From contig JASTWF010000093.1 of the NCBI GenBank assembly GCA_030390025.1, forward strand, positions 372,001 through 436,000: DNA of 64,000 nucleotides. Reading direction: 5' to 3'. Positions 5,881-64,000 of this stretch are shown in pieces. A model generated the notes under the pieces. It saw nothing but the letters and a program-made list of their open reading frames with translations, was not told the DNA's origin and searched no databases. How positions within the stretch are numbered: the first letter of the stretch is position 1; each line of letters starts with the position of its first letter. A program made the position numbers and the translations under genes. The DNA is from Squalus acanthias. Its lineage: Eukaryota.

Positions 5881-5911
5881 TGGGAGCGTCCCAGCGTCAT
5901 CCCGACACCGA

Positions 5912-8968: not shown

Positions 8969-9029
8969 CCATCCCGACACCGACTGGAGTTGCAAATTGT
9001 CCGGGGCGTTCCCAGCGGTCAGCCTAATG

Positions 9030-13641: not shown

Positions 13642-14240
13642 AGGTGTCAGCCTTGCATCAGGTGGGAGAAGGTTGTGGGTTCAAGCCCAACGCCAGAGAC
13701 TTGAGCACAAAAATCTAGGCTGACACTCCAGCACCGTACTGAGGGAGTGCTGCACTGTCGGAGGTGCCGCCTTTCAAATGAGACGTTAAACCGAGGCACC
13801 GTCTGCTCTCTCAGGTGGACATAAAAGATCCCATGGCACTATTAGTTGTCTGCAATTGTAAGGTACACATGCATTGTTCTCTATCTATATATGCTTTGTT
13901 GAGTCTGTATTTCTTTACTACTTCACCTGAGGAAGGGGCGATCGATAGCTCCGAAAGCTTGTGATTTCAAATAAAACTGTTGAACTATAACCTGGTGTTG
14001 TGCGACCTCTCAACTATTATGAAGAGCAGGGGAGTTCTCCCCGGTGTCCTGACTATTATTATCCTTCAACCAACATCACTTTAAAATAAACACATTATCT
14101 GGTCATTATCTAATTACTGTTTGTGGGAGCTTGCTGTGCACAAATTGGCTGCTGCATTTCCTGCATGACCAAAGTGATCACTTAAAGTACTTCATTGGCT
14201 GTAAAGCGCTTTGGGGTTGTGAAAGGCGCTGTATAAATAC
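13642..14240 (+). mobile_element. tRNA/Deu SINE interrupted by a Penelope 3' end (about 13845-14010)
   Basis: SINE core split at ggcactatta; actatta duplicated around an insert containing ctgaggaaggggc..gctccgaaagc. Confidence 0.8.
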
Positions 14241-14396: not shown

Positions 14397-14792
14397 AAAG
14401 TCGCACAACACCAGGTTATAGTCCAACAGTTTTATTTAAAATTACGAGCTTTCGGAGCTCCGCTCCTTCTTCAGGTAAAGGTACAGTGAGGGAATGGATT
14501 ACACAGTATATATAGACAGAGAACAATGTGTCTGCAGAGATACAATCTGTTAGGGAGGCATTACATCAAAGACACAGCAGAGTACAGCTAAGACAATGAG
14601 GTGGGTCACAGGGGGTCCAACGTGTCAAATGCTGCCGTCTGCAGTTAAGCTTTTAACTTTTTTTTGTGTTTTTTTTTAAAAACGGGAAGACAGACAACGA
14701 TGTCGAGTCACGTTCTGTAGCGTGACATGAACCCGAGATCCCTATTGAGGCCGTCCTCATGGGTGCGGAACTTGGCTATCAGTTTCTTTAAG
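14397..14792 (-). mobile_element. Truncated Penelope-like insertion with a 13-bp TSD
   Basis: cattcttaaatgc at 14384 and 14793; hammerhead-like ctgaagaaggagcggagctccgaaagc on the minus strand. Confidence 0.8.
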
Positions 14793-21223: not shown

Positions 21224-21324
21224 TCTCTCACAGTAACTCTACCTGAAGAAGGGGCAGGATAGCTCCGAAAGCTTGTAATTTTAAATAAATCTGTTGGACT
21301 ATAACCTGGTGTTGTGCGACTTCT
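21224..21324 (+). mobile_element. 101-bp Penelope 3'-end insertion (hammerhead-like motif plus tail) with a 12-bp TSD
   Basis: caataaaaatat at 21212 and 21325; ctgaagaaggggc..gctccgaaagc..ggactataacctggtgttgtgcgacttct. Confidence 0.8.
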
Positions 21325-48421: not shown

Positions 48422-48589
48422 GTCATAGAATCAGAGAAATTTACAGCACAGAAGGAGGCCATTCGGCCCATCTTGTCCGTGCTGGCCGACAAACAGCTAT
48501 CCACCCTAATCCCACTTTCCAGCACTTGGTCCGTAGCCTTGTAGGTTATGGCACTTCAAGTGCATATCCAAGTACTTTTTAAATGTGAT
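48422..48589 (-). mobile_element. CR1 3' tail, left half; continues at 63867-64000
   Basis: ..aagtactttttaaatgtgat joins aagggtctctgcctctaccaccctttcaggcagtgagttccag (reverse complement of LWNSLP-coding CR1 sequence). Confidence 0.8.
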
Positions 48590-49653
48590 GTGGAGATGCC
48601 GGTGTTGGACTGGGGTGGACAAATGTCAGAAGTCGCACAACACCAGGTTATAGTCCAACAGCTTTATTTGAAATCACAAGCTTTCGGAGCTGCTGACGAA
48701 GGAGCAGCAGCAGCAGAGTGGTGGTCTCTGTGACCAGGAAGAGGAGAAGGAGAAGGAGACCAGACAGCAGACCACCACCAACAACCAACAACCACTACTG
48801 AGGTGCCTGGAGAGAGAGGACAGGACAGGAGAGGAGAGGAGAAAGAAAGGAAGGCCAAGGCCATCAACAACAGAGGAGAGGCCTTTCCACACTGCCTCCT
48901 CAATTGGCCTCCATTTTAGGAGAGGGAGAGAGGGGAGAAAACATCCCAACAACCATCAACTGTTTGGAAGGAGGGAGGAAGGAAAGAACAGCTACAGGTG
49001 GGTGTGATTCTGGTGCACTCTCCCAGAGACTTTGTTTTGTAGGTGGGGGGAGGAAAGAAGAAAAGAAGAGGGCCGGAACATCCAAGGGGTGTGTGTGTGT
49101 GGCTTCTGTAAAAGCTAGGCCGCACACACCATATTAAACACCCCTTTCCCATTGCCTGACCTGGGACAGCTGGAGCTGCCTAGGTGAAGTCCCCAATTAA
49201 TTTAATCTTATTGGGCATCGTTAAGACCTGGTGCAGGACTGAGCCTGGGCATCTCCAGCTATCCCAGGTGAAGACATCTTCTCCCCCCACCAGAAGACCA
49301 CCACCAAAGACTTTTATTACATCGGAGAGTGCACCCCCCCTGCCAACACCCACCCACTAACCATCCTGAGTGGCGACCCTGCCCTTGCGGCTTCCCTCCT
49401 TCCCACCCCCTCTCTCTCTCTCTCTTGTCTCTCTCTGCTTCTCTCTCTAAAAGGCACCTCAATCTATTTTAATTAAGTACCTATTGAGCAGAGGGGAGAA
49501 GGCCCCTCTCCCAATTAATTCATATAAAGGGAGAGGTGTGCCTTCAATTTAAGAGCTCCCTCTGCTCAGGGGAAAACAAACAAAAAACCGAGGCCATTAA
49601 CACCTTCAGGCCTGTGACTTGGGGTGAGTGTAGCCCTTAAAGATCAACCCATC

Positions 49654-51812
49654 ATGGCGAGTACATCTTCGTCGGTGGCGGGGGCAGCGAGGACCTATGC
49701 GAGCGTGGCAGCCGCGGCCACGGCCGCAGCCACGAGTCCTCCTGTTACCCCGTCACCTTTTACCCTCCTTACGAGGAAGAATGGGGTCAAGAGCTACACT
49801 CACCCCAACATGACAATAGAGGCGTGCGTAAAAGCCATGGCTGGGGTTGTCGGCCCTTCAGCCATCGTCGCCGCCTCTAAAATGTACGGCAAGGCTGTGT
49901 TCTTCCTGGGGTCGGAGCGGGCGGTGTCCCTGGCCATCGAGAAGGGGCTCACCGTGGGCGGGACCTTCCTGCCGGTGGACCCCCTTGAGGCCACCGCGCA
50001 AAGGATTGTGGTTTCCAACGTCCCGCCCTTTGTTCCGGGTGAGCTCCTCCTCCCCCACCTACGTCAACTGGGGGAGGTGAGGTCGGGGATCACACCCATC
50101 CCGCTCGGCTTCCGGGAAGCCAGCCTTCGGCACGTCTTCTCCTTCCGGCGCCAGCTTTTCGTCCGGCTGGCGCGGGAGGAGGACGCGGATGGCGCGTTCA
50201 CGGTGCTCCACGGGGGGACCGCCCACCGCGTCTTCTGGACCTCGGACGGCGTGCGGTGCTACGCCTGTAAGGAGGTGGGGCACGTCCGCAAAAACTGCCC
50301 CGCCTCCAAGGCCGCCACGACACCTGGCGCGGCCAGGGTTGGCGCCGCCGCCCCCCCTCCCCCTGATACTGTCCGCGCGTCGACGGCGACGGATGCGCGG
50401 TCGAAATCGGAGGCCAACACCACCACGGCCTCCGGCGGGGAGGAGGGAGAGCGTCCGGGGGGAAGGAAGGCGCGTAGGAAAAATAAACACCTAAGGGCGG
50501 ATCCCCTCGCGGAGGAAACATCAGAGTTGACCGAACTCACGCCCGAGTACATCGCGGAGTTGGTCGGGACGCATGAGACTGGGGGGGTCCTCGTGCCCGG
50601 GCCCGTGACCGTGACCGCAACTGCTGAGGCAGCTAAATCAAGACCTGCGGCCGGGCTCGGGCCCGAGGGGCCCAAGAAACCCAGTCGTCGGAAGGGGGCA
50701 GAGAGGGAGGCCCCAGCAGACATGGAGGCCTCCCCCTCTCCGGGCCCCAACTTGTTAAAAAGAAAGCTCCGCCCCCAGCAGGAGGACTGCGAGGAGGAAG
50801 GTCCCTCCGCAAAAGGGGGGCAGTCGCCCGCCGCGGGTGCTGCGCCCCACCCCACCACCGTCATCGTCGCGCGCGATCGGCAGGGGTCGTCTGTCCCTCG
50901 GGAGGGTGAGACAGCCGAGTCTGTCCGACCTGTGCCTCCCGGGGATGGGGAAGAGACCCTGCCCGTGGGGGGGGGCGCGGAACAACCCGCGGAGGGAAAT
51001 GTAGTTCCGGAACCGTTGCTCCTCGCCGGGTCGGGCGTCCTGGGGACTGGGGCGGGCGAGGCCAAAGAGGCTGAAGCCGAGCCCGCCTTTTATAACCCAG
51101 ACATCTCCCAGGGACTGCTCGACCTGGTGGAGGAGTGTAGCAGTCCCCGGCCCGCTGGGTCGGAGGTTGGTGGCGGGGAGACGGAAAGCCCCCTGACTCC
51201 GTCTCTGTTGTTGGCGCCGGACGTGCTGGAGGAATTTGGGATTATTTTCTCCCCGGTTTCTCCGGTCGCCCCGGCGCCTGAGGCGGGGGGGGGGGCCCCG
51301 AACCGCCGCCGCCGCCTCCCGGCCCGGCGCCCCTGAAGGAGCCCAGGGTGGACTCCTCTGCCACCGATCCTGGGGGTGGGATCGTGACGGAGGCGGGGCC
51401 GGCCGGTGCGGCCGAGCCGTTCGCTGCACCCTGTGCGACGGACGGGTCGGCCGCCGGTGACGACCTCCCGGAGGAGGACGGGGACTCGGTGGTGGGCATC
51501 GAGGACGATTTGGAGTCCATCGGCAGCGAGGTGATGGACGCCCTCGTGCCCTTCACCGACTCTCCCCTCATCCCCGTAGGGGAACTCCGGGATTTTATGG
51601 CCATGAGCCAGGGTCGTCACAAGAAGATCCGGCTGGCCCTCGACAAGTGGTCGGAGCTGGCGCTGCTCGTCGTGTCCGTCCGCGCCGCCGTTAAAATCAT
51701 GGGCGCGGACAAGGACGTTGGCCGGCTCGAGCTGCGTCGGCTCAAGAGTTTCCACACTGGGCTGCTGAGGGAGTGGCGGTCGTCAGTGACCGCGCTCCCT
51801 CCCCTCCGTTAG
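49654..51812 (+). CDS. Tx1 ORF1 (RRM-like plus CCHC), frameshift in a G run at about 51290
   Basis: SAIVAASKMYGKAVFFL..SNVPPF..CYACKEVGHVRKNC; matches intact copy R. Confidence 0.9.
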
Positions 51813-51837
51813 GTAGAGGTTGCACTATGCTTCTGAG

Positions 51838-54800
51838 ATGAAGATAACCATAGCCAGCCTCAACATCAACGGCAGCAGGGAGGCGCGCCGTAGATTCAAT
51901 AACTTCTCGGTCCTTCGGGACGGGAAATATGCGGTGTGCTTCCTGCAAGAAACCCACACCGTTCCGGGAGACGAGGCCACGTGGCTCCTGGAGTGGCAAG
52001 GAGGGGTCAGCATGAGTCACCTCTCCAACAATTCCTGCGGGGTGGCTGTCTTGCTGGCCCCGCATTTTCAGCCGGAGATCTTGAGGGTCAAGGAGCACGT
52101 GCCGGGCCGCTTGCTCCAGGTCACTGTTCGCCTGGGAGGCGTGCCGCTCCATTTAGTGAACGTGTACGCCCCCCGGACCGGTGCGCAGCAAGTGCGCTTC
52201 TTCGGAGAAGTGTCCGCTCTTCTGGGCTCCATCGACGTGGGCGAGTGCGTCATCCTCGGGGGGGATTTCAATTGTACCCTCGAGGCGCGGGACCGGTCGG
52301 GTCCCCCGCGAAGCCCGGCGGCGATGGAGAAGTTGCGGGACCTGGTCGGGTCCTTCGACTTGGTGGACGTCTGGCGAAATCTCCATCCCGACTCCAGCGC
52401 CTTCACGAGCGTGAGGTCTGGAGGAGGAAGGTCCAGAATCGACCGCCTTTACATTTCCCGGGCGTACGTCTCCTGCGTTCCGGCGGCTTCCATGCGGCCG
52501 GTGCCGTGCACGGACCACCACCTGGTGTGGGCGGAGCTCGCTCCGCTGCGCGCGCGGGGGGGGTCCGCGTACTGGCATTTTAACAACCTGCTGCTGGAGG
52601 ACGCGCGGTTCCGGGATTCGTTTCGCCGGTTCTGGGCCGACTGGAGAAGGAAGCGGGGAGGCTTCCCCTCCTTGAGGCTATGGTGGGACGTGGGCAAGGC
52701 TCACGTCCGCGTCTTCTGTCAGGAGTACGCGAAGGGGTCGACCAAGAGGCGGGAGGCCCGGGTCGGGCGATTGGAGAAAGAAGTGCTCGACCTGGAGTCC
52801 CGTCTCGGTCAGGTCGTCGAGGACCCGGCCCTGCGGAAGGTGTACGAAGAGAAGAAGGGCGCGCTGAAGGACCTGCAGCTGGTCGGGTCCCGAGGCGCGT
52901 ACGTGAGGTCGCGGATCCAGTTCCTGCGGGACCTGGACCGCGGCTCCCCCTTCTTCTACTCGCTGGAAAAAAGACGGGGGGGTCCGTAAGCAGCTCTTGG
53001 GGCTGCTGGCCGACGACGGATCTCTGGTCTCGGATCCGGAGGGCATCAGCGCGGAGGCCCGGGCCTATTACGGGGCTCTGTTCTCTTCGGATCCGTCCAG
53101 CGAGGATGCGCGCAGAGTTTTGTGGGAGGACCTGCCGAAGGTCGGCCCGGAGGGCGCCGAGAATTTAGAAGCTCCGCTAAGCCTGGCGGAGCTGACCGGC
53201 GCCCTGCGCCAGCTCTCGAGGGGCAAGTCCCCGGGGCTGGACGGGCTGACCGTGGAGTTCCACAGGGCGTTCTGGGACGTCTTGGGGGACGACTACGCGC
53301 GGGTCCTGGGGGAAAGTCTGGCGACCGGGGAGATGCCCCTCTCTTGGCGCAGGGCGGTCATCGTCCTGCTGCCCAAGAAGGGCGATCTCCGCCTACTTAA
53401 GAACTGGCGCCCGGTCTCCCTCCTCAGCACGGACTACAAAATTTTCGCCAGGGCTATGTCTGCTCGCCTTGGCACCGTGCTGGCCCGCATGATCCACCCC
53501 GACCAGTCCTACACGGTCCCGGGCCGGAGCATCCACGATAACATCCATCTGGTCCGGGACCTGGTCCACCATTCCCAGAGGGCTGGTCTGTCGGTCGCCT
53601 TCCTTTCCCTGGATCAGGAGAAGGCGTTCGACAGGGTGGATCACGAGTATCTTTTCGGGACTCTGCGCGCATTCGGGTTCGGGACGCATTTCGTCGCCCG
53701 GATCCGACTTCTGTACGCCGCCGCGGAGTGTCTCATTAAAGTTAACGGGTCTTTGACGGCGCCCCTTCGCTTCGGGAGGGGGGTGCGTCAGGGATGCCCC
53801 ATGTCCGGTCAGTTATACGCCGTTTGCGTGGAGCCTTTCCTGCGCCTCTTGCGGAAGAGGTTGACGGGACTGGCTCTGCAAGGGCCGGGCGTGGAGGTGG
53901 TCCTCTCGGCTTACGCCGATGACGTGCTCCTCGCGGTCACGGATCCCGTCGACTTGCGGAGGATGCGAGAATGCCAGCAGATTTACTCGGACGCATCCTC
54001 CGCCAAGATCAACTGGGAGAAATGTTCTGGACTCCTGGTGGGCCCATGGCGGGTGGACTCCCTGCCGGAGGAGTTCGGGCCTTTCGCCTGGAGCACCACG
54101 CACCTCCTCTACCTGGGAGTCTACCTCAGCCCGGCCGAGGACGCCTGGCCGGCGAACTGGCAAGAGCTGGAGGCCAAAGTCACCGCTCGCCTAGGGCGCT
54201 GGACAGGACTGCTCCGAGTGTTGTCCTACAGGGGTCGAGCGCTGGTCATAAACCAGCTGGTGGCCGCCATGTTGTGGTACCGGTTGGTCACTTTGATCCC
54301 TCCCCCTGCGTTTGTCGCCAAGATGCAGAAGAAGCTCGTCGACTTCTTCTGGGACAAAAGGAAGCACTGGGTCTCTGCCGCGGTTTTGAGTCTCCCGCTT
54401 AGGGAGGGCGGTCAGGCGCTGGTGTGCCTTCGCACCCAGGCGGCGACTTTCCGTCTTCAGACGCTGCAGAGATACCTGTACGTGGAGAATCCTCCTAGGT
54501 GGCGTGCGCTGGCGACGTATTTCTTCCGCCAGCTGCACGGCCTCAATTACGACACGCAGCTCCTGTTTGTGAGAGTGGGTGGCACGCGTGCCAGCCTGCG
54601 GGAGCTGCCTGTCTTCTACCAGGAACTGCTATGGGTTTGGAACAGCGTCGCCTCCGAGCGCAGTTCTCCCCCGTCAGGAGCGGCGGCCGTCCTTCGGGAG
54701 CCGCTGTTCAGGAATCCGCACCTCCACGACCGCGGGTTCGGCTGGCTGGCGGAGGGCAGGGCTGTGCCCGGTAAGGTGACCAGAGTCGGGGACCTGCTCG

Positions 54801-55738
54801 ATGGCGGAGGAGCGGGCTGGATGGCGCCGGAGGAGTTGGCGAGGCGCATGTCCTGGGTCAACGTCCGGCTCGCGGTCAAAGCCATCGAGTCGCTAAAAGT
54901 GGCACTGGGCCCCGTCTCCACTAGGTGTGTCGAGGAGGCTCAGGCACGTGGGGCGATCCCGTCCGAACTGACCCCCGTTCGGACGGAATTCCTTATCGGC
55001 GCCCGGCCCCGAATCCTCCCTCGGGAGCCGCCGCCTCACCACTTGAGCCTTCTCGGAGAAATGCCCTCCGTGCCCTTTCAATCCGCACGGAGGCGTTTCC
55101 TGTACGGGCTGCTCCTGCACACTCTCCACTTTGCCATCTTCGTCTGCCGTCCGGACACGCCTTGGCGTACCATCCTGCCGTCCGGCGGAGGCGAAGGTCC
55201 CCATTGGAAGGCTCTCTACGCGGGAGTCTTCCCTTGTTCTATTGGGGACTTGGCCTGGAGGGTGTTGCACGGAGCAGTCCCGTGCAATAGGATTTTAAGT
55301 AGGTTTACGGACTCCCAGGCTGCTTGCCATTTCTGCGGCCTGGAGGAGTCCGTCTATCACATTTATGTTGAATGTGAGAGGTTGCAGCCCCTCTTTCATT
55401 ATTTGAAGGGGCTGCTCCTCAATTTCTGGTTGCACTTCAGCCCCACGCTCCTGATCTACGGTCACCCGGTGCGGAGGGGAGCGGGTAGGTCGGAGGACCT
55501 CCTCGTAGGACTGCTCCTGGGCCTGGCCAAGAAAGCCATTAATTGGTCCAGGCAGCGGGCGGTCGAGGGGGTCGTTCGGCCCGATTGCCTGCCTCTCTTC
55601 CGCGGCCATGTTCGCGCCCGGGTGGCCCTGGAGATGGAGCACGCGGTGTCCGCCGGCACGCTTGAGTTTTTCCGCGACCGGTGGGCGCCGCGGGGGCTGG
55701 AGTGCATCGTCACCCCGGACTTCCAAATTTTGATTTGA
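51838..55738 (+). CDS. Tx1 ORF2 (APE-RT-zinc finger), frameshift in a G run at about 52980
   Basis: SLNING..FLQETH..GGDFN..TDH; QGCPMSG; YADD; CHFC..HIYVEC. Confidence 0.93.
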
Positions 55739-56077
55739 TTTATTAAGTTTCATTTAAAGTTTTAATTGATTTACAGTAAATTTGGGTTCTGTTCAACCAA
55801 AAAGAGGAACACCAGGTTATAGTCCAACAGCTTTATTTGAAATCACAAGCTTTCGGAGCAATGCTCCTTGGTCAGGTGAAGTGAAGAGATGCATATAGGC
55901 ACAGCATATATAGTCAGAGAACACTGCCAGATGATTACAGTTAATCTTTCTAACTGCCCTTTATCACACCTCAGCAGAGAGATAATCCCGGCAATCAAAG
56001 GTGTGGATGGTGTCCAAACAGGTCAGTCAGGAAAACATTACATCAAAGACAATGAGGTGGGGTCACAAGGGGTCAAA

Positions 56078-56480
56078 TGTGGCAGATGCAGGAGGAACGC
56101 GATGGACACCTACAGACGCTGAAAGACGCCCTCGTAAGAACGGGATATGACGCTCGACTCGTCGATCCACAGTTCCGACGGGCCACAGCGAAAAATCGCA
56201 TAGACCTCCTCAGAAGACAAACACGGGACACAACCAACAGAGTACCCTACGTCGTCCAGTACTTCCCCGGAGCGGAGAAACTACGCCATGTTCTTCGCAG
56301 CCTTCAACATGTCATCGATGACGACGAACACCTCGCTAAGGCCATCCCCACACCTCCACTTCTCGCCTTCAAACAGCCGCCTAACCTCAAACAGACCATC
56401 GTTCGCAGCAAATGACCCAGCTTTCAGGAGAACAGCGACCACGACACCACACAACCCTGCCACGGCAACCTCTGCAAGAC
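56078..56480 (+). pseudogene. Penelope RT C-terminal/linker remnant; GIY-YIG region deleted
   Basis: RDGHLQTLKDALVRTGY..RVPYVVQYFPG..PLLAFKQPPNLKQTIVRSK*..PCHGNLCKT. Confidence 0.85.
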
Positions 56481-56603
56481 ACCTTTGATTGCTGGGATTA
56501 TCTCTCTGCCGAGGTGTGATAAAGGGCAGTTAGAAAGATTAACTGTAATCATCTGGCAGTGTTCTCTGACTATATATGCTGTGCCTATATGCATCTCTTC
56601 ACT

Positions 56604-56640
56604 TCACCTGATGAAGGAGCAGCGCTCCGAAAGCTTGTGA
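56604..56640 (+). ncRNA. Minimal type I hammerhead ribozyme motif in the Penelope terminal repeat
   Basis: UCAC-CUGAUGA-A-GGAGC(AGC)GCUCC-GAAA-GCUU-GUGA: both core boxes, stem II, palindromic mini stem III, stem I UCAC/GUGA. Confidence 0.8.
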
Positions 56641-56743
56641 TTTCAAATAAAGCTGTTGGACTATAACCTGGTGTTGATCTTTTTGGTTGGACAAACACAA
56701 ATTTACTGTAAATCAATTAAAACTTTAAATGAAACTTAACAAA

Positions 56744-59700
56744 TCAAATCAAAATTTGGAAGTCCGGGGTGACGATGCACTCCAGTCCCCGCGGCGCCCA
56801 CCGGTCGCGGAAAAACTCAAGCGTGCCGGCGGACAACGCGTGCTCCATCTCCAGGGCCACCCGGGCGCGAACATGGCCGCGGAAGAGAGGCAGGCAATCG
56901 GGCCGAACGACCCCCTCAACCGCCCGCTGCCTGGACCAATTAATGGCTTTCTTGGCCAGGCCCAGGAGCAGTCCTACGAGGAGGTCCTCCGACCTACCCG
57001 CTCCCCTCCGCACCGGGTGACCGTAGATCAGGAGCGTGGGGCTGAAGTGCAACCAGAAATTGAGGAGCAGCCCCTTCAAATAATGAAAGAGGGGCTGCAA
57101 ACTCTCACACTCAATATAAATGTGATAGACGGACTCCTCCAGGCCACAGAAATGACAAGCAGCCTGGGAGTCCGTAAACCTACTTAAAATCCTATTGCAC
57201 GGGACTGCTCCGTGCAACACCCTCCAGGCCAAGTCCCCAATAGAACAAGGGAAGACTCCCGCGTAGAGAGCCTTCCAATGGGGACCTTCGCCTCCGCCGG
57301 ACGGCAGGATGGTACGCCAAGGCGTGTCCGGACGGCAGACGAAGATGGCAAAGTGGAGAGTGTGCAGGAGCAGCCCGTACAGGAAACGCCTCCGTGCGGA
57401 TTGAAAGGGCACGGAGGGCATTTCTCCGAGAAGGCTCAAGTGGTGAGGCGGCGGCTCCCGTGGGAGGATTCGGGGCCGGGCGCCGATAAGGAATTCCGTC
57501 CGAACGGGGGTCAGTTCGGACGGGATCGCCCCACGTGCTTGAGCCTCCTCGACACACCTAGTGGAGACGGGGCCCAGTGCCACTTTTAGCGACTCGATGG
57601 CTTTGACCGCGAGCCGGACGTTGACCCAGGACATGCGCCTCGCCAACTCCTCCGGCGCCATCCAGCCCGCTCCTCCGCCATCGAGCAGGTCCCCGACTCT
57701 GGTCACCTTACCGGGCACAGCCCTGCCCTCCGCCAGCCAGCCGAACCCGCGGTCGTGGAGGTGCGGATTCCTGAACAGCGGCTCCCGAAGGACGGCCGCC
57801 GCTCCTGACGGGGGAGAACTGCGCTCGGAGGCGACGCTGTTCCAAACCCATAGCAGTTCCTGGTAGAAGACAGGCAGCTCCCGCAGGCTGGCACGCGTGC
57901 CACCCACTCTCACAAACAGGAGCTGCGTGTCGTAATTGAGGCCGTGCAGCTGGCGGAAGAAATACGTCGCCAGCGCACGCCACCTAGGAGGATTCTCCAC
58001 GTACAGGTATCTCTGCAGCGTCTGAAGACGGAAAGTCGCCGCCTGGGTGCGAAGGCACACCAGCGCCTGACCGCCCTCCCTAAGCGGGAGACTCAAAACC
58101 GCGGCAGAGACCCAGTGCTTCCTTTTGTCCCAGAAGAAGTCGACGAGCTTCTTCTGCATCTTGGCGACAAACGCAGGGGGAGGGATCAAAGTGATCAACC
58201 GGTACCACAACATGGCGGCCACCAGCTGGTTTATGATCAGCGCTCGACCCCTGTAGGACAACACTCGGAGCAGTCCTGTCCAGCGCCCTAGGCGAGCGGT
58301 GACTTTGGCCTCCAGCTCTTGCCAGTTCGCCGGCCAGGCGTCCTCGGCCGGGCTGAGGTAGACTCCCAGGTAGAGGAGGTGCGTGGTGCTCCAGGCGAAA
58401 GGCCCGAACTCCTCCGGCAGGGAGTCCACCTGCCATGGGCCCACCAGGAGTCCAGAACATTTCTCCCAGTTGATCTTGGCGGAGGATGCGTCCGAGTAAA
58501 TCTGCTGGCATTCTCGCATCCTCCGCAAGTCGACGGGATCCGTGACCGCGAGGAGCACGTCATCGGCGTAAGCCGAGAGGACCACCTCCACGCCCGGCCC
58601 TTGCAGAGCCAGTCCCGTCAACCTCTTCCGCAAGAGGCGCAGGAAAGGCTCCACGCAAACGGCGTATAACTGACCGGACATGGGGCATCCCTGACGCACC
58701 CCCCTCCCGAAGCGAAGGGGCGCCGTCAAAGACCCGTTAACTTTAATGAGACACTCCGCGGCGGCGTACAGAAGTCGGATCCGGGCGACGAAATGCGTCC
58801 CGAACCCGAATGCGCGCAGAGTCCCGAAAAGATACTCGTGATCCACCCTGTCGAACGCCTTCTCCTGATCCAGGGAAAGGAAGGCGACCGACAGACCAGC
58901 CCTCTGGGAATGGTGGACCAGGTCCCGGACCAGATGGATGTTATCGTGGATACTCCGGCCCGGGACCGTGTAGGACTGGTCGGGGTGGATCATGCGGGCC
59001 AGCACGGTGCCAAGGCGAGCAGACATAGCCCTGGCGAAAATTTTGTAGTCCGTGCTGAGGAGGGAGACCGGGCGCCAGTTCTTAAGTAGGCGGAGATCGC
59101 CCTTCTTGGGCAGCAGGACGATGACCGCCCTGCGCCAAGAGAGGGGCATCTCCCCGGTCGCCAGACTTTCCCCCAGGACCCGCGCGTAGTCGTCCCCCAA
59201 GACGTCCCAGAACGCCCTGTGGAACTCCACGGTCAGCCCGTCCAGCCCCGGGGACTTGCCCCTCGAGAGCTGGCGCAGGGCGCCGGTCAGCTCCGCCAGG
59301 CTTAGCGGAGCTTCTAAATTCTCGGCGCCCTCCGGGCCGACCTTCGGCAGGTCCTCCCACAAAACTCTGCGCGCATCCTCGCTGGACGGATCCGAAGAGA
59401 ACAGAGCCCCGTAATAGGCCCGGGCCTCCGCGCTGATGCCCTCCGGATCCGAGACCAGAGATCCGTCGTCGGCCAGCAGCCCCAAGAGCTGCTTACGGAC
59501 CCCCCGTCTTTTTTCCAGCGAGTAGAAGAAGGGGGAGCCGCGGTCCAGGTCCCGCAGGAACTGGATCCGCGACCTCACGTACGCGCCTCGGGACCCGACC
59601 AGCTGCAGGTCCTTCAGCGCGCCCTTCTTCTCTTCGTACACCTTCCGCAGGGCCGGGTCCTCGACGACTTGACCGAGACGGGACTCCAGGTCGAGCACTT

Positions 59701-60643
59701 CTTTCTCCAATCGCCCGACCCGGGCCTCCCGCCTCTTGGTCGACCCCTTCGCGTACTCCTGACAGAAGACGCGGACGTGAGCCTTGCCCACGTCCCACCA
59801 TAGCCTCAAGGAGGGGAAGCCTCCCCGCTTCCTTCTCCAGTCGGCCCAGAACCGGCGAAACGAATCCCGGAACCGCGCGTCCTCCAGCAGCAGGTTGTTA
59901 AAATGCCAGTACGCGGACCCCCCCCGCGCGCGCAGCGGAGCGAGCTCCGCCCACACCAGGTGGTGGTCCGTGCACGGCACCGGCCGCATGGAAGCCGCCG
60001 GAACGCAGGAGACGTACGCCCGGGAAATGTAAAGGCGGTCGATTCTGGACCTTCCTCCTCCAGACCTCACGCTCGTGAAGGCGCTGGAGTCGGGATGGAG
60101 ATTTCGCCAGACGTCCACCAAGTCGAAGGACCCGACCAGGTCCCGCAACTTCTCCATCGCCGCCGGGCTTCGCGGGGGACCCGACCGGTCCCGCGCCTCG
60201 AGGGTACAATTGAAATCCCCCCCGAGGATGACGCACTCGCCCACGTCGATGGAGCCCAGAAGAGCGGACACTTCTCCGAAGAAGCGCACTTGCTGCGCAC
60301 CGGTCCGGGGGGCGTACACGTTCACTAAATGGAGCGGCACGCCTCCCAGGCGAACAGTGACCTGGAGCAAGCGGCCCGGCACGTGCTCCTTGACCCTCAA
60401 GATCTCCGGCTGAAAATGCGGGGCCAGCAAGACAGCCACCCCGCAGGAATTGTTGGAGAGGTGACTCATGCTGACCCCTCCTTGCCACTCCAGGAGCCAC
60501 GTGGCCTCGTCTCCCGGAACGGTGTGGGTTTCTTGCAGGAAGCACACCGCATATTTCCCGTCCCGAAGGACCGAGAAGTTATTGAATCTACGGCGCGCCT
60601 CCCTGCTGCCGTTGATGTTGAGGCTGGCTATGGTTATCTTCAT
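56744..60643 (-). CDS. Tx1 ORF2, 1299 aa from MKITIASLN
   Basis: Uninterrupted APE, RT (YADD) and CCHC finger. Confidence 0.96.
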   Translation of the reverse strand: MKITIASLNINGSREARRRFNNFSVLRDGKYAVCFLQETHTVPGDEATWLLEWQGGVSMSHLSNNSCGVAVLLAPHFQPEILRVKEHVPGRLLQVTVRLGGVPLHLVNVYAPRTGAQQVRFFGEVSALLGSIDVGECVILGGDFNCTLEARDRSGPPRSPAAMEKLRDLVGSFDLVDVWRNLHPDSSAFTSVRSGGGRSRIDRLYISRAYVSCVPAASMRPVPCTDHHLVWAELAPLRARGGSAYWHFNNLLLEDARFRDSFRRFWADWRRKRGGFPSLRLWWDVGKAHVRVFCQEYAKGSTKRREARVGRLEKEVLDLESRLGQVVEDPALRKVYEEKKGALKDLQLVGSRGAYVRSRIQFLRDLDRGSPFFYSLEKRRGVRKQLLGLLADDGSLVSDPEGISAEARAYYGALFSSDPSSEDARRVLWEDLPKVGPEGAENLEAPLSLAELTGALRQLSRGKSPGLDGLTVEFHRAFWDVLGDDYARVLGESLATGEMPLSWRRAVIVLLPKKGDLRLLKNWRPVSLLSTDYKIFARAMSARLGTVLARMIHPDQSYTVPGRSIHDNIHLVRDLVHHSQRAGLSVAFLSLDQEKAFDRVDHEYLFGTLRAFGFGTHFVARIRLLYAAAECLIKVNGSLTAPLRFGRGVRQGCPMSGQLYAVCVEPFLRLLRKRLTGLALQGPGVEVVLSAYADDVLLAVTDPVDLRRMRECQQIYSDASSAKINWEKCSGLLVGPWQVDSLPEEFGPFAWSTTHLLYLGVYLSPAEDAWPANWQELEAKVTARLGRWTGLLRVLSYRGRALIINQLVAAMLWYRLITLIPPPAFVAKMQKKLVDFFWDKRKHWVSAAVLSLPLREGGQALVCLRTQAATFRLQTLQRYLYVENPPRWRALATYFFRQLHGLNYDTQLLFVRVGGTRASLRELPVFYQELLWVWNSVASERSSPPSGAAAVLREPLFRNPHLHDRGFGWLAEGRAVPGKVTRVGDLLDGGGAGWMAPEELARRMSWVNVRLAVKAIESLKVALGPVSTRCVEEAQARGAIPSELTPVRTEFLIGARPRILPREPPPHHLSLLGEMPSVPFQSARRRFLYGLLLHTLHFAIFVCRPDTPWRTILPSGGGEGPHWKALYAGVFPCSIGDLAWRVLHGAVPCNRILSRFTDSQAACHFCGLEESVYHIYIECESLQPLFHYLKGLLLNFWLHFSPTLLIYGHPVRRGAGRSEDLLVGLLLGLAKKAINWSRQRAVEGVVRPDCLPLFRGHVRARVALEMEHALSAGTLEFFRDRWAPRGLECIVTPDFQILI

Positions 60644-60668
60644 CTCAGAAGCATAGTGCAACCTCTAC

Positions 60669-62822
60669 CTAACGGAGGGGAGGGAGCGCGGTCACTGACG
60701 ACCGCCACTCCCTCAGCAGCCCAGTGTGGAAACTCTTGAGCCGACGCAGCTCGAGCCGGCCAACGTCCTTGTCCGCGCCCATGATTTTAACGGCGGCGCG
60801 GACGGACACGACGAGCAGCGCCAGCTCCGACCACTTGTCGAGGGCCAGCCGGATCTTCTTGTGACGACCCTGGCTCACGGCCATAAAATCCCGGAGTTCC
60901 CCTACGGGGATGAGGGGAGAGTCGGTGAAGGGCACGAGGGCGTCCATCACCTCGCTGCCGATGGACTCCAAATCGTCCTCGATGCCCACCACCGAGTCCC
61001 CGTCCTCCTCCGGGAGTTCGTCACCGGCGGCCAACCCGTCCGTCACACAGGGTGCAGCGAACGGCTCGGCCGCACCGGCCGGCCCCGCCTCCGTCACGAT
61101 CCCACCCCCAGGATCGGTGGCAGAGGAGTCCACCCTGGGCTCTTTCAGGGGCGCCGGGCCGGGAGGCGGCGGCGGTTCGGGGCCCCCCCCCGCCTCAGGC
61201 GCCGGAGCGACCGGAGAAACCAGGGAGAAAATAATCTCAAATTCCTCCAGTACGTCCGGCGCCAACATCAGAGACGGAGTCAGGGGGCTTTCTGTCTCCC
61301 CGCCACCAACCTCCGACCCAGCGGGCTGGGGATTGCTACACTCCTCCACCAGGTCGAGCAGTCCCTGGGAGATGTCTGGGTTATAAAAGGCGGGCTCGGC
61401 TTCAGCCTCTTTGGCCTCGCCCGCCCCAGTCCCCAGGACGCCCGACCCGGCGAGGAGCAACGGTTCAGGTTCTACATTTCCCTCCGCGGGTTGTTCCGCG
61501 CCCCCCCCCACGGGCAGGGTCTCTTCCCCATCCCCGGGAGGCACAGGTCGGACAGACTCGGCTGTCTCACCCTCCCGAGGGACAGACGACCCCTGCCGAT
61601 CGCGCGCGACGATGACGGTGGTGGGGTGGGGCGCAGCACCCGCGGCGGGCGACTGCCCCCCTTTTGCGGAGGGACCTTCCTCCTCGCAGTCCTCCTGCTG
61701 GGGGCGGAGCTTTCTTTTTAACAAGTTGGGGCCCGGAGAGGGGGAGGCCTCCATGTCTGCTGGGGCCTCCCTCTCTGCCCCCTTCCGACGACTGGGTTTC
61801 TTGGGCCCCTCGGGCCCGAGCCCGGCCGCAGGTCTTGATTCAGCTGCCTCAGCAGTTGCGGTCACGGTCACGGGCCCGGGCACGAGGACCCCCCCAGTCT
61901 CATGCGTCCCGACCAACTCCGCGATGTACTCGGGCGTGAGTTCGGTCAACTCTGATGTTTCCTCCGCGAGGGGATCCGCCCTTAGGTGTTTATTTTTCCT
62001 ACGCGCCTTCCTTCCCCCCGGACGCTCTCCCTCCTCCCCGCCGGAGGCCGTGGTGGTGTTGGCCTCCGATTTCGACCGCGCATCCGTCGCCGTCGACGCG
62101 CGGACAGTATCAGGGGGAGGGGGGGCGGCGGCGCCAACCCTGGCCGCGCCAGGTGTCGTGGCGGCCTTGGAGGCGGGGCAGTTTTTGCGGACGTGCCCCA
62201 CCTCCTTACAGGCGTAGCACCGCACGCCGTCCGAGGTCCAGAAGACGCGGTGGGCGGTCCCCCCGTGGAGCACCGTGAACGCGCCATCCGCGTCCTCCTC
62301 CCGCGCCAGCCGGACGAAAAGCTGGCGCCGGAAGGAGAAGACGTGCCGAAGGCTGGCTTCCCGGAAGCCGAGCGGGATGGGTGTGATCCCCGACCTCACC
62401 TCCCCCAGTTGACGTAGGTGGGGGAGGAGGAGCTCACCCGGAACAAAGGGCGGGACGTTGGAAACCACAATCCTTTGCGCGGTGGCCTCAAGGGGGTCCA
62501 CCGGCAGGAAGGTCCCGCCCACGGTGAGCCCCTTCTCGATGGCCAGGGACACCGCCCGCTCCGACCCCAGGAAGAACACAGCCTTGCCGTACATTTTAGA
62601 GGCGGCGACGATGGCTGAAGGGCCGACAACCCCAGCCATGGCTTTAACGCACGCCTCTATTGTCATGTTGGGGTGAGTGTAGCTCTTGACCCCATTCTTC
62701 CTCGTAAGGAGGGTAAAAGGTGACGGGGTAACAGGAGGACTCGTGGCTGCGGCCGTGGCCGCGGCTGCCACGCTCGCATACGTCCTCGCTGCCCCCGCCA
62801 CCGACGAAGATGTACTCGCCAT
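60669..62822 (-). CDS. Tx1 ORF1, 717 aa from MASTSS
   Basis: Uninterrupted; CCHC knuckle; long acidic disordered C-half. Confidence 0.93.
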   Translation of the reverse strand: MASTSSSVAGAARTYASVAAAATAAATSPPVTPSPFTLLTRKNGVKSYTHPNMTIEACVKAMAGVVGPSAIVAASKMYGKAVFFLGSERAVSLAIEKGLTVGGTFLPVDPLEATAQRIVVSNVPPFVPGELLLPHLRQLGEVRSGITPIPLGFREASLRHVFSFRRQLFVRLAREEDADGAFTVLHGGTAHRVFWTSDGVRCYACKEVGHVRKNCPASKAATTPGAARVGAAAPPPPDTVRASTATDARSKSEANTTTASGGEEGERPGGRKARRKNKHLRADPLAEETSELTELTPEYIAELVGTHETGGVLVPGPVTVTATAEAAESRPAAGLGPEGPKKPSRRKGAEREAPADMEASPSPGPNLLKRKLRPQQEDCEEEGPSAKGGQSPAAGAAPHPTTVIVARDRQGSSVPREGETAESVRPVPPGDGEETLPVGGGAEQPAEGNVEPEPLLLAGSGVLGTGAGEAKEAEAEPAFYNPDISQGLLDLVEECSNPQPAGSEVGGGETESPLTPSLMLAPDVLEEFEIIFSLVSPVAPAPEAGGGPEPPPPPGPAPLKEPRVDSSATDPGGGIVTEAGPAGAAEPFAAPCVTDGLAAGDELPEEDGDSVVGIEDDLESIGSEVMDALVPFTDSPLIPVGELRDFMAVSQGRHKKIRLALDKWSELALLVVSVRAAVKIMGADKDVGRLELRRLKSFHTGLLREWRSSVTALPPLR

Positions 62823-64000
62823 AATGGAGGGTTCTTTAAGGGCTACACTCACCCCAAGTCACAGGCCTGAAGGTGTTAATGGCCTCGGTTTTTTTTTTCT
62901 GTTTTCCCCTGAGCAGAGGGAGCTCTTAAATTGAAGGCACACCTCTCCCTTTATATGAATTAATTGGGAGAGGGGCCTTCTCCCCTCTGCTCAATGGGTA
63001 CTTAAAAATAGATTGAGGTGCCTCTTAGAGAGAGAGGCAGAGAGAGACAAGAGACAAAGAGAGAGAGAGAGAGGGGGGGTGGGAAGGAGGGAAGCCGCAA
63101 GGGCAGGGTCGCCACTCAGGATGGTGGGTGGGTGGGTGTTGGCAGGGGGGTGCACTCTCCGATGTAATAAAAGTCTTTGGTGGTGGTCTTCTGGTGGGGG
63201 GAGAAGATGTCTTCACCTGGGATAGCTGGAGATGCCCAGGCTCAGTCCTGCACCAGGTCTTAACGATGCCCAATAAGATTAAATTAATTGGGGACTTCAC
63301 CTAGGCAGCTCCAGCTGTCCCAGGTCAGGCAATGGGAAAGGGGTGTTTAATATGGTGTGTGCGGCCTAGCTTTTACAGAAGCCACACACACACACCCCCC
63401 CTTAGATGTTCCGGCCCTCTTCTTTTCTTCTTTCCTCCCCCCACCTACAAAACAAAGTCTCTGGGAGAGTGCACCAGAATCACACCCACCTGTAGCTGTT
63501 GTTCTTTCCTTCCTTCCTCCTTCCAAACAGATGATGTTTGTTGTTGGTGTTTTCTCCCCTCTCTCCCTCTCCTAAAATGGAGGCCAATTGAGGAGGCAGT
63601 GTGGAAAGGCCTCTCCTCTGTTGTTAATGGCCTTGGCCTTCCTTTCTTATCTTTCTCCTCTCCTGTCCTCTCTCTCCAGGCACCTCAGTTGTGGTTGTGG
63701 ATGTGTTGGTGGTGGTCTGCTGTCTGGTCTCCTTCTCCTTCTCCTCTTCCTGCTCACAGAGACCACCACTCTGCTGCTGCTGCTGCTCCTCAGTCAGCAG
63801 CTCCGAAAGCTTGTGATTTCAAATAAAGCTGTTGGACTATCACCTGGTGTTGTGCGACTTCTCAGATTTTTAAATGTGATAAGGGTCTCTGCCTCTACCA
63901 CCCTTTCAGGCAGTGAGTTCCAGACCCCCACCACCCTCTGGCTGAAATGATTTCTCCTCAAATCCCCTCTAAATGTCTGACCAAATACTTTAAATCTATG

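What the first reader, a model, noticed from the sequence alone, without database searches (positions are those of the whole stretch)
48639..63852. Tx1 retrotransposon apparently targeting the hammerhead-bearing terminus of a Penelope element
Seen: two full-length Tx1 copies sit at the same position in the two inverted Penelope ends, both antisense to the ribozyme. Each has a very long duplication (52 and 53 bp) that ends at the stem II loop of the hammerhead. The copies differ by UTR indels and 3' terminal bases, which favours independent insertions. Established: Tx1-clade elements are often sequence-specific, including for other transposons. I know of no Penelope or hammerhead target, so this may be a new retroelement-on-retroelement parasitism.
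Basis: partly seen in the sequence, partly recalled or inferred. Interest (0 to 1): 0.85.

Follow-up and report, generated by a model that had tools for sequence, protein, structure and literature searches.

The report
Tx1 retrotransposon aimed at Penelope element ends
Two copies of a Tx1-type jumping gene sit at exactly the same base in the two inverted ends of an older Penelope-type jumping gene, most likely as two separate hits, which points to a Tx1 family that aims at Penelope ends, a target not reported so far.

Summary
One old Penelope-like insertion of about 0.9 kb (48590-63866) has inverted 3' arms and is bounded by a 14-bp host duplication. Each arm carries a 7.1-kb Tx1-clade LINE at the same nucleotide, antisense to a minimal hammerhead motif. 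Each LINE is flanked by a 52/53-bp duplication that ends at the hammerhead's loop II.

ORF2 is 50% identical over 1299 aa to Xenopus Tx1. The spacer's ORF fragment matches proteins with RT plus GIY-YIG domains, which is the Penelope architecture.

Independent insertion is favoured over one inverted duplication, at about 0.8:
- Divergence between the arms is very uneven (0.4% in ORF2; 3-8% in the UTRs and the Penelope flank).
- The junction bases differ.
- Four sites where the copies differ are polymorphic across many other copies in public runs.

Support from elsewhere is thin. One contig from another organism runs from the Tx1 3' end 30 letters into the target. Eight unchecked first-reader notes report the same thing on other pieces of this genome, so the scan found it before on other DNA. 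A 91%-related partial copy in the window lies at an unrelated site.

Tx1 families aimed at other transposons are already known, so this is a new target, not a new principle. A role for the ribozyme itself is not shown.

The parts
48576..48589 (.). Left copy of the 14-bp host target duplication that bounds the whole composite
   Evidence: The exact 14-mer occurs only twice in the window, here and at 63867-63880, against 0.00 expected. The host repeat is continuous across this point in another copy at 21140-20840.
48590..48638 (-). Outer tail of the inverted (left) Penelope 3' arm
   Evidence: It runs in register into the duplicated segment, as in the uninterrupted termini at 14398-14459 and 21261-21324.
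48639..48690 (.). Outer 52-bp copy of the duplicated Penelope segment, next to the 5' end of the left Tx1
   Evidence: D2, 100% identical to 55808-55859.
48691..55807 (+). Left Tx1 copy, 7117 bp and full length. Both ORFs are broken by frame-shifting indels relative to the right copy.
   Evidence: ORF list. tblastn shows ORF1 and ORF2 each split in two pieces. Indels near 51285 and 52976.
55808..55859 (.). Inner 52-bp copy of the duplicated segment, next to the 3' end of the left Tx1
55860..56089 (-). Rest of the inverted Penelope arm. Its hammerhead core is degenerate (CUGACCA).
   Evidence: Sequence. Similarity to the uninterrupted copy at 14407-14632. Contigs of all four runs diverge at 56089|56090 (table 7). 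Three substitutions private to this arm lie at 55860, 55861 and 55870.
56090..56623 (+). 5'-truncated sense Penelope body: an ORF fragment (56092-56412), the 3' UTR and the 5' part of the hammerhead motif
   Evidence: Translation. phmmer gave 562 hits at E<=0.001. Of the 6 hits I scanned, 2 (P0218, P0197) have RVT_1 followed by GIY-YIG with the fragment matching between them, 1 (P0253) has GIY-YIG only, 2 (P0127, P0118) have RVT_1 only, and 1 has no family.
56604..56640 (+). Minimal hammerhead-like motif of the right arm: helix I 5' strand, CUGAUGA, unpaired A, helix II with loop AGC, GAAA, palindromic AGCU, U, helix I 3' strand
   Evidence: Read by eye. In 5 window copies aligned, 97.8% of cells pair against at most 50% when partners are slid. 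There is one compensatory pair and loop II varies in length. The architecture fits the published PLE min-HHR (PMC4209133). No Rfam match.
56624..56676 (.). Inner 53-bp copy of the duplicated segment, next to the 3' end of the right Tx1
   Evidence: D1.
56677..63799 (-). Right Tx1 copy, 7123 bp. ORF1 (62852-60669; first ATG at 62822) and ORF2 (60661-56744; first ATG at 60643) are uninterrupted.
63800..63852 (.). Outer 53-bp copy of the duplicated segment, next to the 5' end of the right Tx1, with one mismatch
   Evidence: 98%; the mismatch is at 63841.
63853..63866 (+). Outer tail of the sense (right) Penelope arm
63867..63880 (.). Right copy of the 14-bp host target duplication
33878..36164 (-). 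Third, 5'-truncated and internally deleted copy of a related Tx1 subfamily. It is not in a Penelope terminus.
   Evidence: blastn 90.7% over 2073 and 97% over 198. tblastn 79% aa identity. The flanks on both sides are unrelated to the target.
13947..14010 (+). Uninterrupted (empty) Penelope terminus; others lie at 14398-14459 (-) and 21261-21324 (+)

Best explanation
Order of events. A 5'-truncated Penelope-like element of about 0.9 kb first inserted into a host repeat and made a 14-bp duplication. It had the head-to-head inverted 3' arms that are common for such elements. Later, and separately, two members of one Tx1-clade LINE family inserted into the two arms. Both went in at the same nucleotide, about 10-14 bp from the Penelope 3' end, and both lie antisense to the Penelope hammerhead motif.

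Inferred mechanism. It follows target-primed reverse transcription as established for APE-type LINEs and for Tx1L.
1. The element's endonuclease nicks the Penelope-sense strand at a specific sequence (...GGTGTT|GTGCGAC).
2. The freed 3' end primes cDNA synthesis on the Tx1 RNA.
3. The other strand is opened 52-53 nt away, in the part that encodes loop II of the hammerhead.
4. Filling in duplicates the 52-53-nt segment.

A sub-variant is equally possible. The upstream copy of the segment may be carried in by a read-through Tx1 transcript and joined by homology. The duplication would then not be a pure staggered-cut product.

Shown: the anatomy, the family identities, the order of events and the non-identity of the two copies. 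Inferred: the endonuclease specificity, the nick positions, and specificity across the whole genome.
For: Anatomy:
- The 52/53-bp duplications and the inverted arms.
- The 14-bp host duplication, whose 14-mer occurs only twice in the window.
- Three empty termini in the window that hold the segment once.

Identity:
- ORF2 has APE, RT and zf-RVT domains and is 50% identical to Xenopus Tx1 over 1299 aa.
- The target's ORF fragment has homologues with RT plus GIY-YIG.
- The min-HHR architecture fits published Penelope-like elements.
- Dual hammerheads on opposite strands 100-700 bp apart are described for truncated Penelope-like elements (PMC4209133).

Separate insertions:
- Substitutions between the copies run at 0.38% in ORF2, 0.88% in ORF1, 3.1% plus 9 indels in the 5' UTR, 7.6% in the 3' UTR and 4.1% in the 145-bp Penelope flank. 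The heterogeneity chi-square is 99, p = 8e-20.
- The last two Tx1 bases and the duplication length differ (GG with 52 nt; TC with 53 nt).
- The left arm has 3 private substitutions within 11 nt of the duplication boundary. The right arm lacks them.
- Of the 14 sites that differ between the copies in 55300-55807, four carry the right copy's letter in many other contigs of run X1: 55367 (43% of depth, 29 contigs), 55372 (40%, 28 contigs), 55696 (96%, 57 contigs) and 55793 (93%, 17 contigs). None of the four is a CpG site.
- A contig of organism E carries the right-copy letters at 6 of these sites. Contigs of organisms B and C carry the left-copy letters at 55367 and 55372.

Recurrence:
- In run X10 (organism E), a 1147-nt contig of depth 15.5 runs from the Tx1 3' part through the junction and ends 30 letters into the segment (table 8, record 9).
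- None of the listed loose ends of X6, X8 or X10 lies at the junction (table 7; 333 further loose ends were not shown).

Precedent: the Tx1L endonuclease is a sequence-specific nickase (PMC1950540), and Tx1 families prefer particular transposons (PMC4494074).
Against: - No genome-wide table of flanks could be made.
- The bridging contig has 30 letters on the far side, one short of the tool's own 31-letter rule. In a low-coverage assembly it shows only that the junction recurs, not that it is the majority.
- The one further related copy in the window (33878-36164, 91%) ends in unrelated sequence.
- The patchy divergence (long tracts at 0.2%, patches at 2-5%) is also what arm-to-arm gene conversion in an old palindrome would give.
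- With the third copy as outgroup, derived changes are about even between the copies. One search reported 13 against 10; four of the 13 and one of the 10 are alignment-edge columns, which leaves about 9 against 9. There is therefore no age difference.
- About 9 of the 15 ORF2 differences change the protein, so there is no sign of purifying selection between two source lineages.
- At 8 of the 14 differing sites in 55300-55807 the right copy's letter was not seen in other contigs at 5% or more.
- The target DNA shows no special fold (z-scores +0.73, -0.68, +0.01).
- First-reader notes on other windows are unchecked.
Confidence: 0.75

Rival explanations
1. There was one Tx1 insertion only. It entered a Penelope 3' end before that Penelope copy retrotransposed or was inverted-duplicated, so both arms inherited it. 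The arms then diverged by 3-4%, and arm-to-arm gene conversion homogenised the middle of the Tx1.
For: - A single 14-bp host duplication bounds the whole 15.3-kb palindrome.
- Divergence is lowest in the middle of each arm and highest at both arm edges, as expected for conversion in a palindrome.
- Derived changes are evenly split between the arms.
- The copies share minority letters of the family, for example 55732.
- A first-reader note reports another Tx1 dimer inside a Penelope-type inverted repeat elsewhere (s1-888295; unchecked).
Against: - Four non-CpG sites where the arms differ carry both letters in 17-57 other contigs each. Whole haplotypes recur in other organisms' contigs. Private post-duplication mutations would not do that.
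- The two terminal Tx1 bases, the duplication length and a 3-substitution cluster beside the left boundary differ between the arms.
- Both arms would have had to be copied right through 7.1 kb of antisense Tx1 and then stop within 230 and 534 nt beyond it. Without the Tx1s the structure is an ordinary short truncated Penelope-like element (PMC4209133).
Confidence: 0.15
2. The Tx1 with its two flanking segments spread into these arms by homology-driven transfer (ectopic gene conversion) from another Tx1-bearing Penelope terminus. No endonuclease-guided retrotransposition was involved.
For: The flanks are highly repeated. The segment's depth is about 50 times that of the Tx1 in runs X6, X8 and X10 (table 2). 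The junctions are in perfect register on both sides.
Against: - Moving a 7.1-kb insert across roughly 50-250 bp of homology is not a known common route in vertebrates (general knowledge).
- The 3' terminal bases vary between the copies and in the organism E contig, as expected for separate reverse-transcription starts.
- The element encodes an apparently complete endonuclease and RT.
Confidence: 0.05
3. The palindrome is an assembly artefact: a fold-back chimeric long read.
For: The locus is a near-perfect inverted repeat 15 kb long.
Against: - A 474-bp asymmetric spacer holds a one-way ORF fragment.
- The alignment has 343 differing columns, most of them in the non-homologous spacer and outer flanks. 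Within the arms, 78 substitutions and 40 gap columns separate the two copies.
- The host flanks are clean and carry a 14-bp duplication.
- Contigs of four runs break at 56089|56090 exactly where the two Penelope arms meet.
Confidence: 0.02

Closest known systems
Tx1L of Xenopus laevis, which inserts into the piggyBac-type transposon Tx1D
   Same: The ORF2 layout is the same and 50% identical over 1299 aa. It inserts at one defined site inside another transposon by a sequence-specific APE-type nickase (PMC1950540; PMC4494074).
   Different: The target here is a retroelement (Penelope-like) rather than a DNA transposon. The duplication is 52-53 bp. The endonuclease hairpin loop implicated in DNA recognition is 3 residues shorter and unlike the RDGH loop of Tx1L (alignment; loop role from PMC1950540).
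Crocodilian Tx1 families with transposon targets: Tx1-Mar (Mariner-N4_AMi), Tx1-9_AMi (Harbinger), Tx1-8_Crp and Tx1-4_AMi (LTR retrotransposons)
   Same: They are Tx1-clade families that prefer a particular site in another mobile element, retroelements included (PMC4494074, section read).
   Different: No Penelope-like target is named in that paper's main text (0 occurrences of 'Penelope'). Relatedness of those families to this one was not tested.
Keno, Kibi, Koshi and other Tx1-clade families aimed at U2 snRNA genes or microsatellites
   Same: The same clade, with the same strategy of landing in multicopy sequence (PMC4494074; PMC4640811).
   Different: Their targets are host genes or simple repeats, not a mobile element.
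Minimal hammerhead ribozymes in the terminal repeats of Penelope-like elements (Cervera and De la Pena 2014)
   Same: The target motif has the published traits. These are the conserved core, an unpaired base at the 5' end of helix II, a short 4-bp helix I, almost no helix III apart from a palindromic stretch, and frequent pairs on opposite strands 100-700 bp apart (PMC4209133).
   Different: Helix II is 5 bp here, against 6-8 bp in the examples described. No Rfam model matched. Cleavage is untested. Cartilaginous fishes are not mentioned in that paper (0 occurrences of 'shark' or 'Callorhinchus').

Membership tests
Tx1 clade of non-LTR retrotransposons | ORF2 with an N-terminal APE-type endonuclease followed by a reverse transcriptase | tested here: met
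   Exo_endo_phos at residues 12-233 (E = 1.7e-11), RVT_1 at 518-767 (E = 8.4e-38) and zf-RVT at 1127-1187 (below Pfam's cut-off).
Tx1 clade of non-LTR retrotransposons | Closest named relatives are Tx1 elements, collinear over the whole ORF2 | tested here: met
   50% identity, 1% gaps and 99% coverage against UniRef 'Transposon TX1 uncharacterized 149 kDa protein' of Xenopus laevis. Another hit is named TX1 in Betta splendens.
Tx1 clade of non-LTR retrotransposons | Placement inside the Tx1 clade in an RT phylogeny that includes L1 and other clades | not tested
   No tree was built. Membership rests on best hits.
Tx1 clade of non-LTR retrotransposons | ORF1 with a CCHC zinc knuckle (feature recalled, not taken from a call) | tested here: met
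   zf-CCHC at residues 211-226, E = 2.3e-4, 21.5 bits against a cut-off of 20.8. Homology to Tx1 ORF1 itself was not tested.
Target-specific Tx1 family | Most copies sit at one defined site of one target sequence | tested here: inconclusive
   Both copies of this subfamily in the window (2 of 2) are at the same site. One contig of another organism bridges the junction by 30 letters. One 91%-related copy lies elsewhere.
Penelope-like element (the target) | ORF with a reverse transcriptase followed by a GIY-YIG endonuclease | tested here: met
   Only a 107-aa fragment is present here. Of the 6 phmmer hits I scanned, 2 (P0218, P0197) have RVT_1 then GIY-YIG with the fragment aligned between the two domains, 1 (P0253) has GIY-YIG only, 2 (P0127, P0118) have RVT_1 only, and 1 (P0231) has no family. 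Pfam and the protein atlas gave nothing for the fragment itself.
Penelope-like element (the target) | Terminal repeats in direct or inverted order that carry a hammerhead motif | tested here: met
   Inverted arms with the motif in each. The left arm's core is mutated.
Hammerhead ribozyme, minimal type I | Conserved core CUGANGA ... GAAA with helices I and II | tested here: met
   The core is intact in 4 of 5 window copies; the left arm has CUGACCA. 97.8% of 45 cells pair, against at most 50% when partners are slid. One pair changes on both sides and one on one side. The shuffle control is weak (51 of 500 shuffles reach the observed value), and the structure was drawn from these same sequences.
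Hammerhead ribozyme, minimal type I | Match to a curated covariance model | tested here: not met
   No Rfam hammerhead family matched at gathering score or at E<=10. Cervera and De la Pena describe these minimal forms as lacking helix III. That this is why the models miss them is my inference.
Hammerhead ribozyme, minimal type I | Self-cleavage | not testable with these tools
   This needs an in-vitro transcription and cleavage assay, probably on dimeric constructs (PMC4209133).

The most novel reading that the evidence does not exclude
The Tx1 family has co-evolved with the ribozyme-bearing Penelope end and does not merely recognise a sequence there.
- The second-strand break is set by the palindromic helix II/loop II DNA. 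That fixes the unusually long stagger of 52-53 nt and leaves a whole hammerhead on one side.
- The element's own 5' end carries the other half of the hammerhead in flipped orientation. That half is 16 of 16 identical to the Penelope family's majority form in the left copy. It does not match either local flank, so the element brings it in.
- Together with the duplicated segment, this rebuilds a usable target at every insertion. Arrays and repeated hits such as this double hit would then arise by themselves.
Probability: 0.2. Interest if true: 0.75.

Novelty: new variant of a known kind. Interest (0 to 1): 0.55.

Why it matters
Target-specific LINEs are natural examples of programmable, RNA-templated insertion at one DNA address. 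Each new address comes with the endonuclease that finds it, so each is a data point on how APE-type nucleases read sequence. A Tx1 family aimed at Penelope-like elements would extend the list of Tx1 targets to the third great class of retroelements. It would also give a clean case of one retroelement living on another in a vertebrate genome. The fixed 52-53-nt duplication and the flipped half-ribozyme at the element's 5' end are concrete handles on second-strand cleavage and 5' joining, the least understood steps of LINE integration. If only the sequence address is new, the finding is a useful but modest addition to transposon catalogues.

Tried and rejected
- Rfam at gathering score over the window and at E<=10 over 55700-56800: no hammerhead family. 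The three weak matches (GRIK4 3' UTR, TCL6, sR30) are chance.
The planned table of flanks in other assemblies was dropped.
- Two metagenome scans, one with a 23-letter piece of the Tx1 3' UTR and one with the first 23 letters of the duplicated segment: 0 hits each.
- The search of earlier findings by sequence with the 3' junction: blank, which by the operators' note means nothing.
- The protein atlas and Pfam on the 107-aa Penelope fragment: nothing usable. The representative search plus Pfam on long hits answered the question.
- DNA folding of an empty target, the 5' junction and the right-arm target: z-scores +0.73, -0.68 and +0.01. I therefore dropped the idea that a stable DNA hairpin marks the site. 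It survives only as part of the low-probability novel case.
- Relative-rate test with the third copy as outgroup: derived changes are even between the copies, so it does not separate the hypotheses.
- A look for purifying selection between the copies: about 9 of 15 ORF2 differences are amino-acid changes. There is no signal, so I do not use 'selection in two source lineages' as an argument.
- The idea that the insertion disables the ribozyme was rejected. The inner copy of the duplicated segment keeps the motif contiguous at 56604-56640.
- The array at 5898-8982, noted by another reader as Tx1-related, shares only a 25-nt identical stretch with this Tx1. I left it aside.
- Papers: Christensen et al. 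2000 (PMC85248) and Kojima and Fujiwara 2004 are not held, so I could not check typical duplication lengths of Tx1-clade elements. Figures S3-S5 of PMC4494074 may list further targets.

What I saw of each paper:
- PMC4494074: passages and section 15.
- PMC6155905, PMC4209133, PMC1950540, PMC8869645 and PMC4640811: passages found by term.
- All other titles: search listings only.

Full report
WHAT IS THERE. The stretch 48576-63880 is one composite insertion. An exact 14-mer occurs only twice in the window, at 48576-48589 and 63867-63880, against 0.00 expected by chance. The sequences outside it are the two halves of a host repeat. That repeat is continuous across the same point in another copy at 21140-20840. 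An earlier first-reader note on this same stretch (s1-890921) had proposed this 14-bp duplication, and I confirm it.

Inside lie two inverted arms of about 7.4 kb, 98.4% identical over 7407 aligned columns. A 474-bp asymmetric spacer separates them.

THE TWO ELEMENTS. The arms hold two elements, at 48691-55807 (+, 7117 bp) and 56677-63799 (-, 7123 bp).
- The right copy has uninterrupted ORFs of 727 and 1305 codons.
- ORF1 has a CCHC knuckle. ORF2 has an APE-type endonuclease, a reverse transcriptase and a C-terminal zf-RVT.
- ORF2 aligns end to end with the Xenopus laevis Tx1 149-kDa protein: 649 of 1299 residues identical, 1% gaps. Membership of the Tx1 clade is therefore well supported by best hits. 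I built no tree.
- The closest partial hits with names are from cartilaginous fishes (Heterodontus 75%, Hemitrygon 69%).
- The left copy is broken in both ORFs by frame-shifting indels relative to the right copy.

THE TARGET. Each element is flanked by a direct repeat: 52 nt at 100% identity for the left copy, and 53 nt with one mismatch for the right copy.
- Three uninterrupted copies of the same sequence lie elsewhere in the window (13947-14010, 14398-14459, 21261-21324). Each holds the segment once, so the repeat is a duplication tied to the insertion.
- The spacer encodes a 107-aa ORF fragment. Pfam and the protein atlas gave nothing for it. A phmmer search of 1.84 billion representatives gave 562 hits at E<=0.001.
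- I scanned 6 of those hits. Two (P0218, P0197) have RVT_1 followed by GIY-YIG, with the fragment aligned between the two domains. One has GIY-YIG only, two have RVT_1 only, and one has no family. RT plus GIY-YIG is the Penelope-like architecture.
- Contigs of all four runs laid diverge at 56089|56090 (table 7). This marks the point where an inverted 3' arm (55860-56089 plus the segment and tail) meets a 5'-truncated sense copy (from 56090).
- Without the two Tx1s the insertion is about 0.9 kb.

THE HAMMERHEAD. On the strand opposite to each Tx1, the right arm reads as follows at 56604-56640: helix I 5' strand, CUGAUGA, one unpaired A, helix II GGAGC/GCUCC with loop AGC, GAAA, a palindromic AGCU, U, and helix I 3' strand. 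The core numbering and the cleavage position after that U are recalled and inferred, not measured.
- I aligned five window copies. The core is intact in 4 of 5.
- Loop II varies from 3 to 8 nt.
- 97.8% of 45 cells pair, against at most 50% when partners are slid.
- One helix I pair changes on both sides (C-G to U-A).
- The shuffle control is weak (51 of 500 shuffles reach the observed value), and I drew the structure from these same sequences.
- No Rfam family matched.
- Passages of Cervera and De la Pena 2014 (PMC4209133) describe just this architecture for Penelope-like elements: an unpaired base at the 5' end of helix II, a helix I of 4-5 bp, no real helix III, and frequent pairs on opposite strands 100-700 bp apart.

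The inner copy of the segment keeps the motif contiguous, so the insertion does not break the ribozyme motif.

ONE INSERTION OR TWO? This is the crux.

Evidence for two insertions:
- Uneven divergence. Substitutions between the copies run at 0.38% in ORF2 (15 of 3929), 0.88% in ORF1 (19 of 2159; 16 of them within 51005-51464), 3.1% in the 5' UTR (30 of 963, plus 9 indels), 7.6% in the 3' UTR (5 of 66), 1 of 104 in the duplicated segments, and 4.1% in the 145-bp Penelope flank. The heterogeneity chi-square is 99, p = 8e-20. Uniform decay after one duplication is excluded.
- Junction differences. The last two Tx1 bases and the duplication length differ (52 and 53 nt). The left arm has three substitutions within 11 nt of the boundary (55860, 55861, 55870) that are private against the family majority in the runs.
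- Family polymorphism. Fourteen sites differ between the copies in 55300-55807. At four of them the right copy's letter is carried by many other contigs of run X1: 55367 (43% of depth, 29 contigs), 55372 (40%, 28 contigs), 55696 (96%, 57 contigs) and 55793 (93%, 17 contigs). None of the four is a CpG site (contexts).
- Haplotypes in other organisms. The organism E contig has the right-copy letters at 55367, 55372, 55696, 55785, 55789 and 55793. The organism B and C contigs have the left-copy letters at 55367 and 55372. These differences therefore pre-exist in the family and were inherited from different source copies.

Evidence against two insertions:
- Patches of 2-5% divergence between long tracts of 0.2% also fit arm-to-arm gene conversion.
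- Derived changes are evenly split against the third copy as outgroup.
- About 9 of the 15 ORF2 differences change the protein.
- At 8 of the 14 differing sites the right copy's letter is rare or private.

I put two separate insertions at about 0.8.

IS THE FAMILY SITE-SPECIFIC? If the two hits are separate, chance is negligible. There are five candidate sites in 64 kb, and both hits have the same base and the same orientation.

From outside the window I have only the following:
-. Eighteen runs from 11 studies, labelled as organisms A-F, hold at least half of the words of 54800-56250.
-. I laid four of those runs on 55300-56250. All four are Logan contigs. In run X10 (organism E) a 1147-nt contig of depth 15.5 covers 55300-55837 and ends there, 30 letters into the segment. 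That is one short of the tool's bridging rule. It is also the furthest a 31-letter-word graph could carry a contig before meeting words shared with thousands of Penelope ends. The assembly word length is recalled, not from a call. At that run's size, unique flanks would not assemble. The contig therefore shows a recurrent junction, not a majority.
-, loose ends. The listed loose ends of X6, X8 and X10 include none at the junction. 333 further loose ends, and 9091 contig pieces, were not shown.
-. Two metagenome scans found nothing.
-. Of 21 notes of this scan that mention Tx1, eight mention Tx1 together with Penelope on other pieces of the same genome. They include 50-53-bp duplications, arrays, another inverted dimer, and a copy in a 26-bp 'micro-island' of Penelope sequence. 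They are unchecked AI notes and I use them as leads only.
-. Against specificity, a third copy at 33878-36164 is 5'-truncated and internally deleted. It is 91-97% identical in DNA and 79% in protein, and it ends in unrelated sequence. It may belong to an older subfamily with another habit or none.

HOW IT MOST LIKELY WORKS. This follows established target-primed reverse transcription and is inferred here.
1. The endonuclease nicks the Penelope-sense strand about 10-14 nt from the Penelope 3' end.
2. cDNA synthesis starts there.
3. The Tx1-sense strand is opened 52-53 nt away, at the loop II position.

The Tx1L endonuclease is a proven sequence-specific nickase (PMC1950540). In the alignment, the hairpin loop that paper ties to DNA recognition is three residues shorter here and unlike Tx1L's. 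That fits a different address.

Two points remain open. First, the upstream copy of the segment may be donor-derived: a read-through transcript joined by homology. Nothing in this window decides it, because all four copies are identical but for one base. Second, each Tx1 begins with 16 nt that are the reverse complement of the hammerhead's 5' half up to loop II. In the left copy these 16 nt equal the Penelope family's majority form (for the majority letters). In both copies they differ at three positions from the local flank (read by eye). So they come in with the element and are not copied from the local target. I cannot explain their origin. Note s1-890172 saw the same thing elsewhere.

COMPARISON WITH WHAT IS KNOWN. 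Kojima 2015 (PMC4494074; passages and section 15 read) lists these Tx1 targets: Tx1D (piggyBac), Mariner-N4_AMi, Harbinger families, particular LTR retrotransposons, microsatellites, satellites, and U2, U5 and 5S genes. 'Penelope' does not occur in its main text.

Four full-text searches found no report of a Penelope or hammerhead target:
- Tx1 + Penelope + hammerhead: 1 paper, a pipeline.
- Penelope-like + hammerhead + shark: 1 review.
- Tx1 + Penelope + shark: 2 genome papers.
- Tx1 + Penelope + target-specific: 2 papers, with no such target in the passages of both that I read.

Repbase entries and subscription journals were not searchable.

VERDICT. The novelty is a new target class and an unusually long duplication within a known behaviour of the Tx1 clade. 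A role for the ribozyme itself is not shown.

Noticed in passing
window 48691-48708 and 63782-63799: Each Tx1 starts with about 16 nt that are the reverse complement of the Penelope hammerhead's 5' half, broken at the same loop II position as the duplication boundary. These 16 nt match the Penelope family majority form (left copy 16 of 16) but not the local flank. They therefore travel with the Tx1. Their origin is unexplained.
   Followed up: partly
window 33878-36164 (-): A third, 5'-truncated Tx1-like copy is about 91% identical and lacks the part matching 53141-53682. It ends with a similar A-rich 3' tail and then runs straight into a different host repeat, not into a Penelope terminus.
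   Followed up: partly
window 5898-8982 and 8943-8967: A long array of AT-rich units, each opening with the same short GC-rich motif, is interleaved with GC-rich blocks. Right after it, 25 nt are identical to the Tx1 stretch just upstream of ORF1 (49619-49643). Another reader noted it as s1-890743.
   Followed up: no
window 55808-55846 (run X1, tables 5 and 5c): A contig of run X1 joins position 55846 back to 55808 with 6 other letters between. That is a head-to-tail repeat of the Penelope terminal segment somewhere in that genome.
   Followed up: no
window 11000-11257, 16766-17638, 26263-26967: There are weak RT-like matches (24-34% aa identity) to the Tx1 ORF2. They are probably fragments of other LINE families.
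   Followed up: no
window 54800-56250: Five runs guessed to be RNA (X11, X13, X14, X15, X18) hold 57-62% of the sampled words of this stretch. This hints at transcripts of the Tx1 3' part or of the Penelope arms, or at DNA carry-over.
   Followed up: no
window 56413-56478: The Penelope ORF fragment ends in a stop. It then jumps to the 3' UTR, skipping the GIY-YIG domain and about 85 nt of UTR that the inverted arm still has (56005-56089). The sense copy is therefore an internally deleted derivative.
   Followed up: partly
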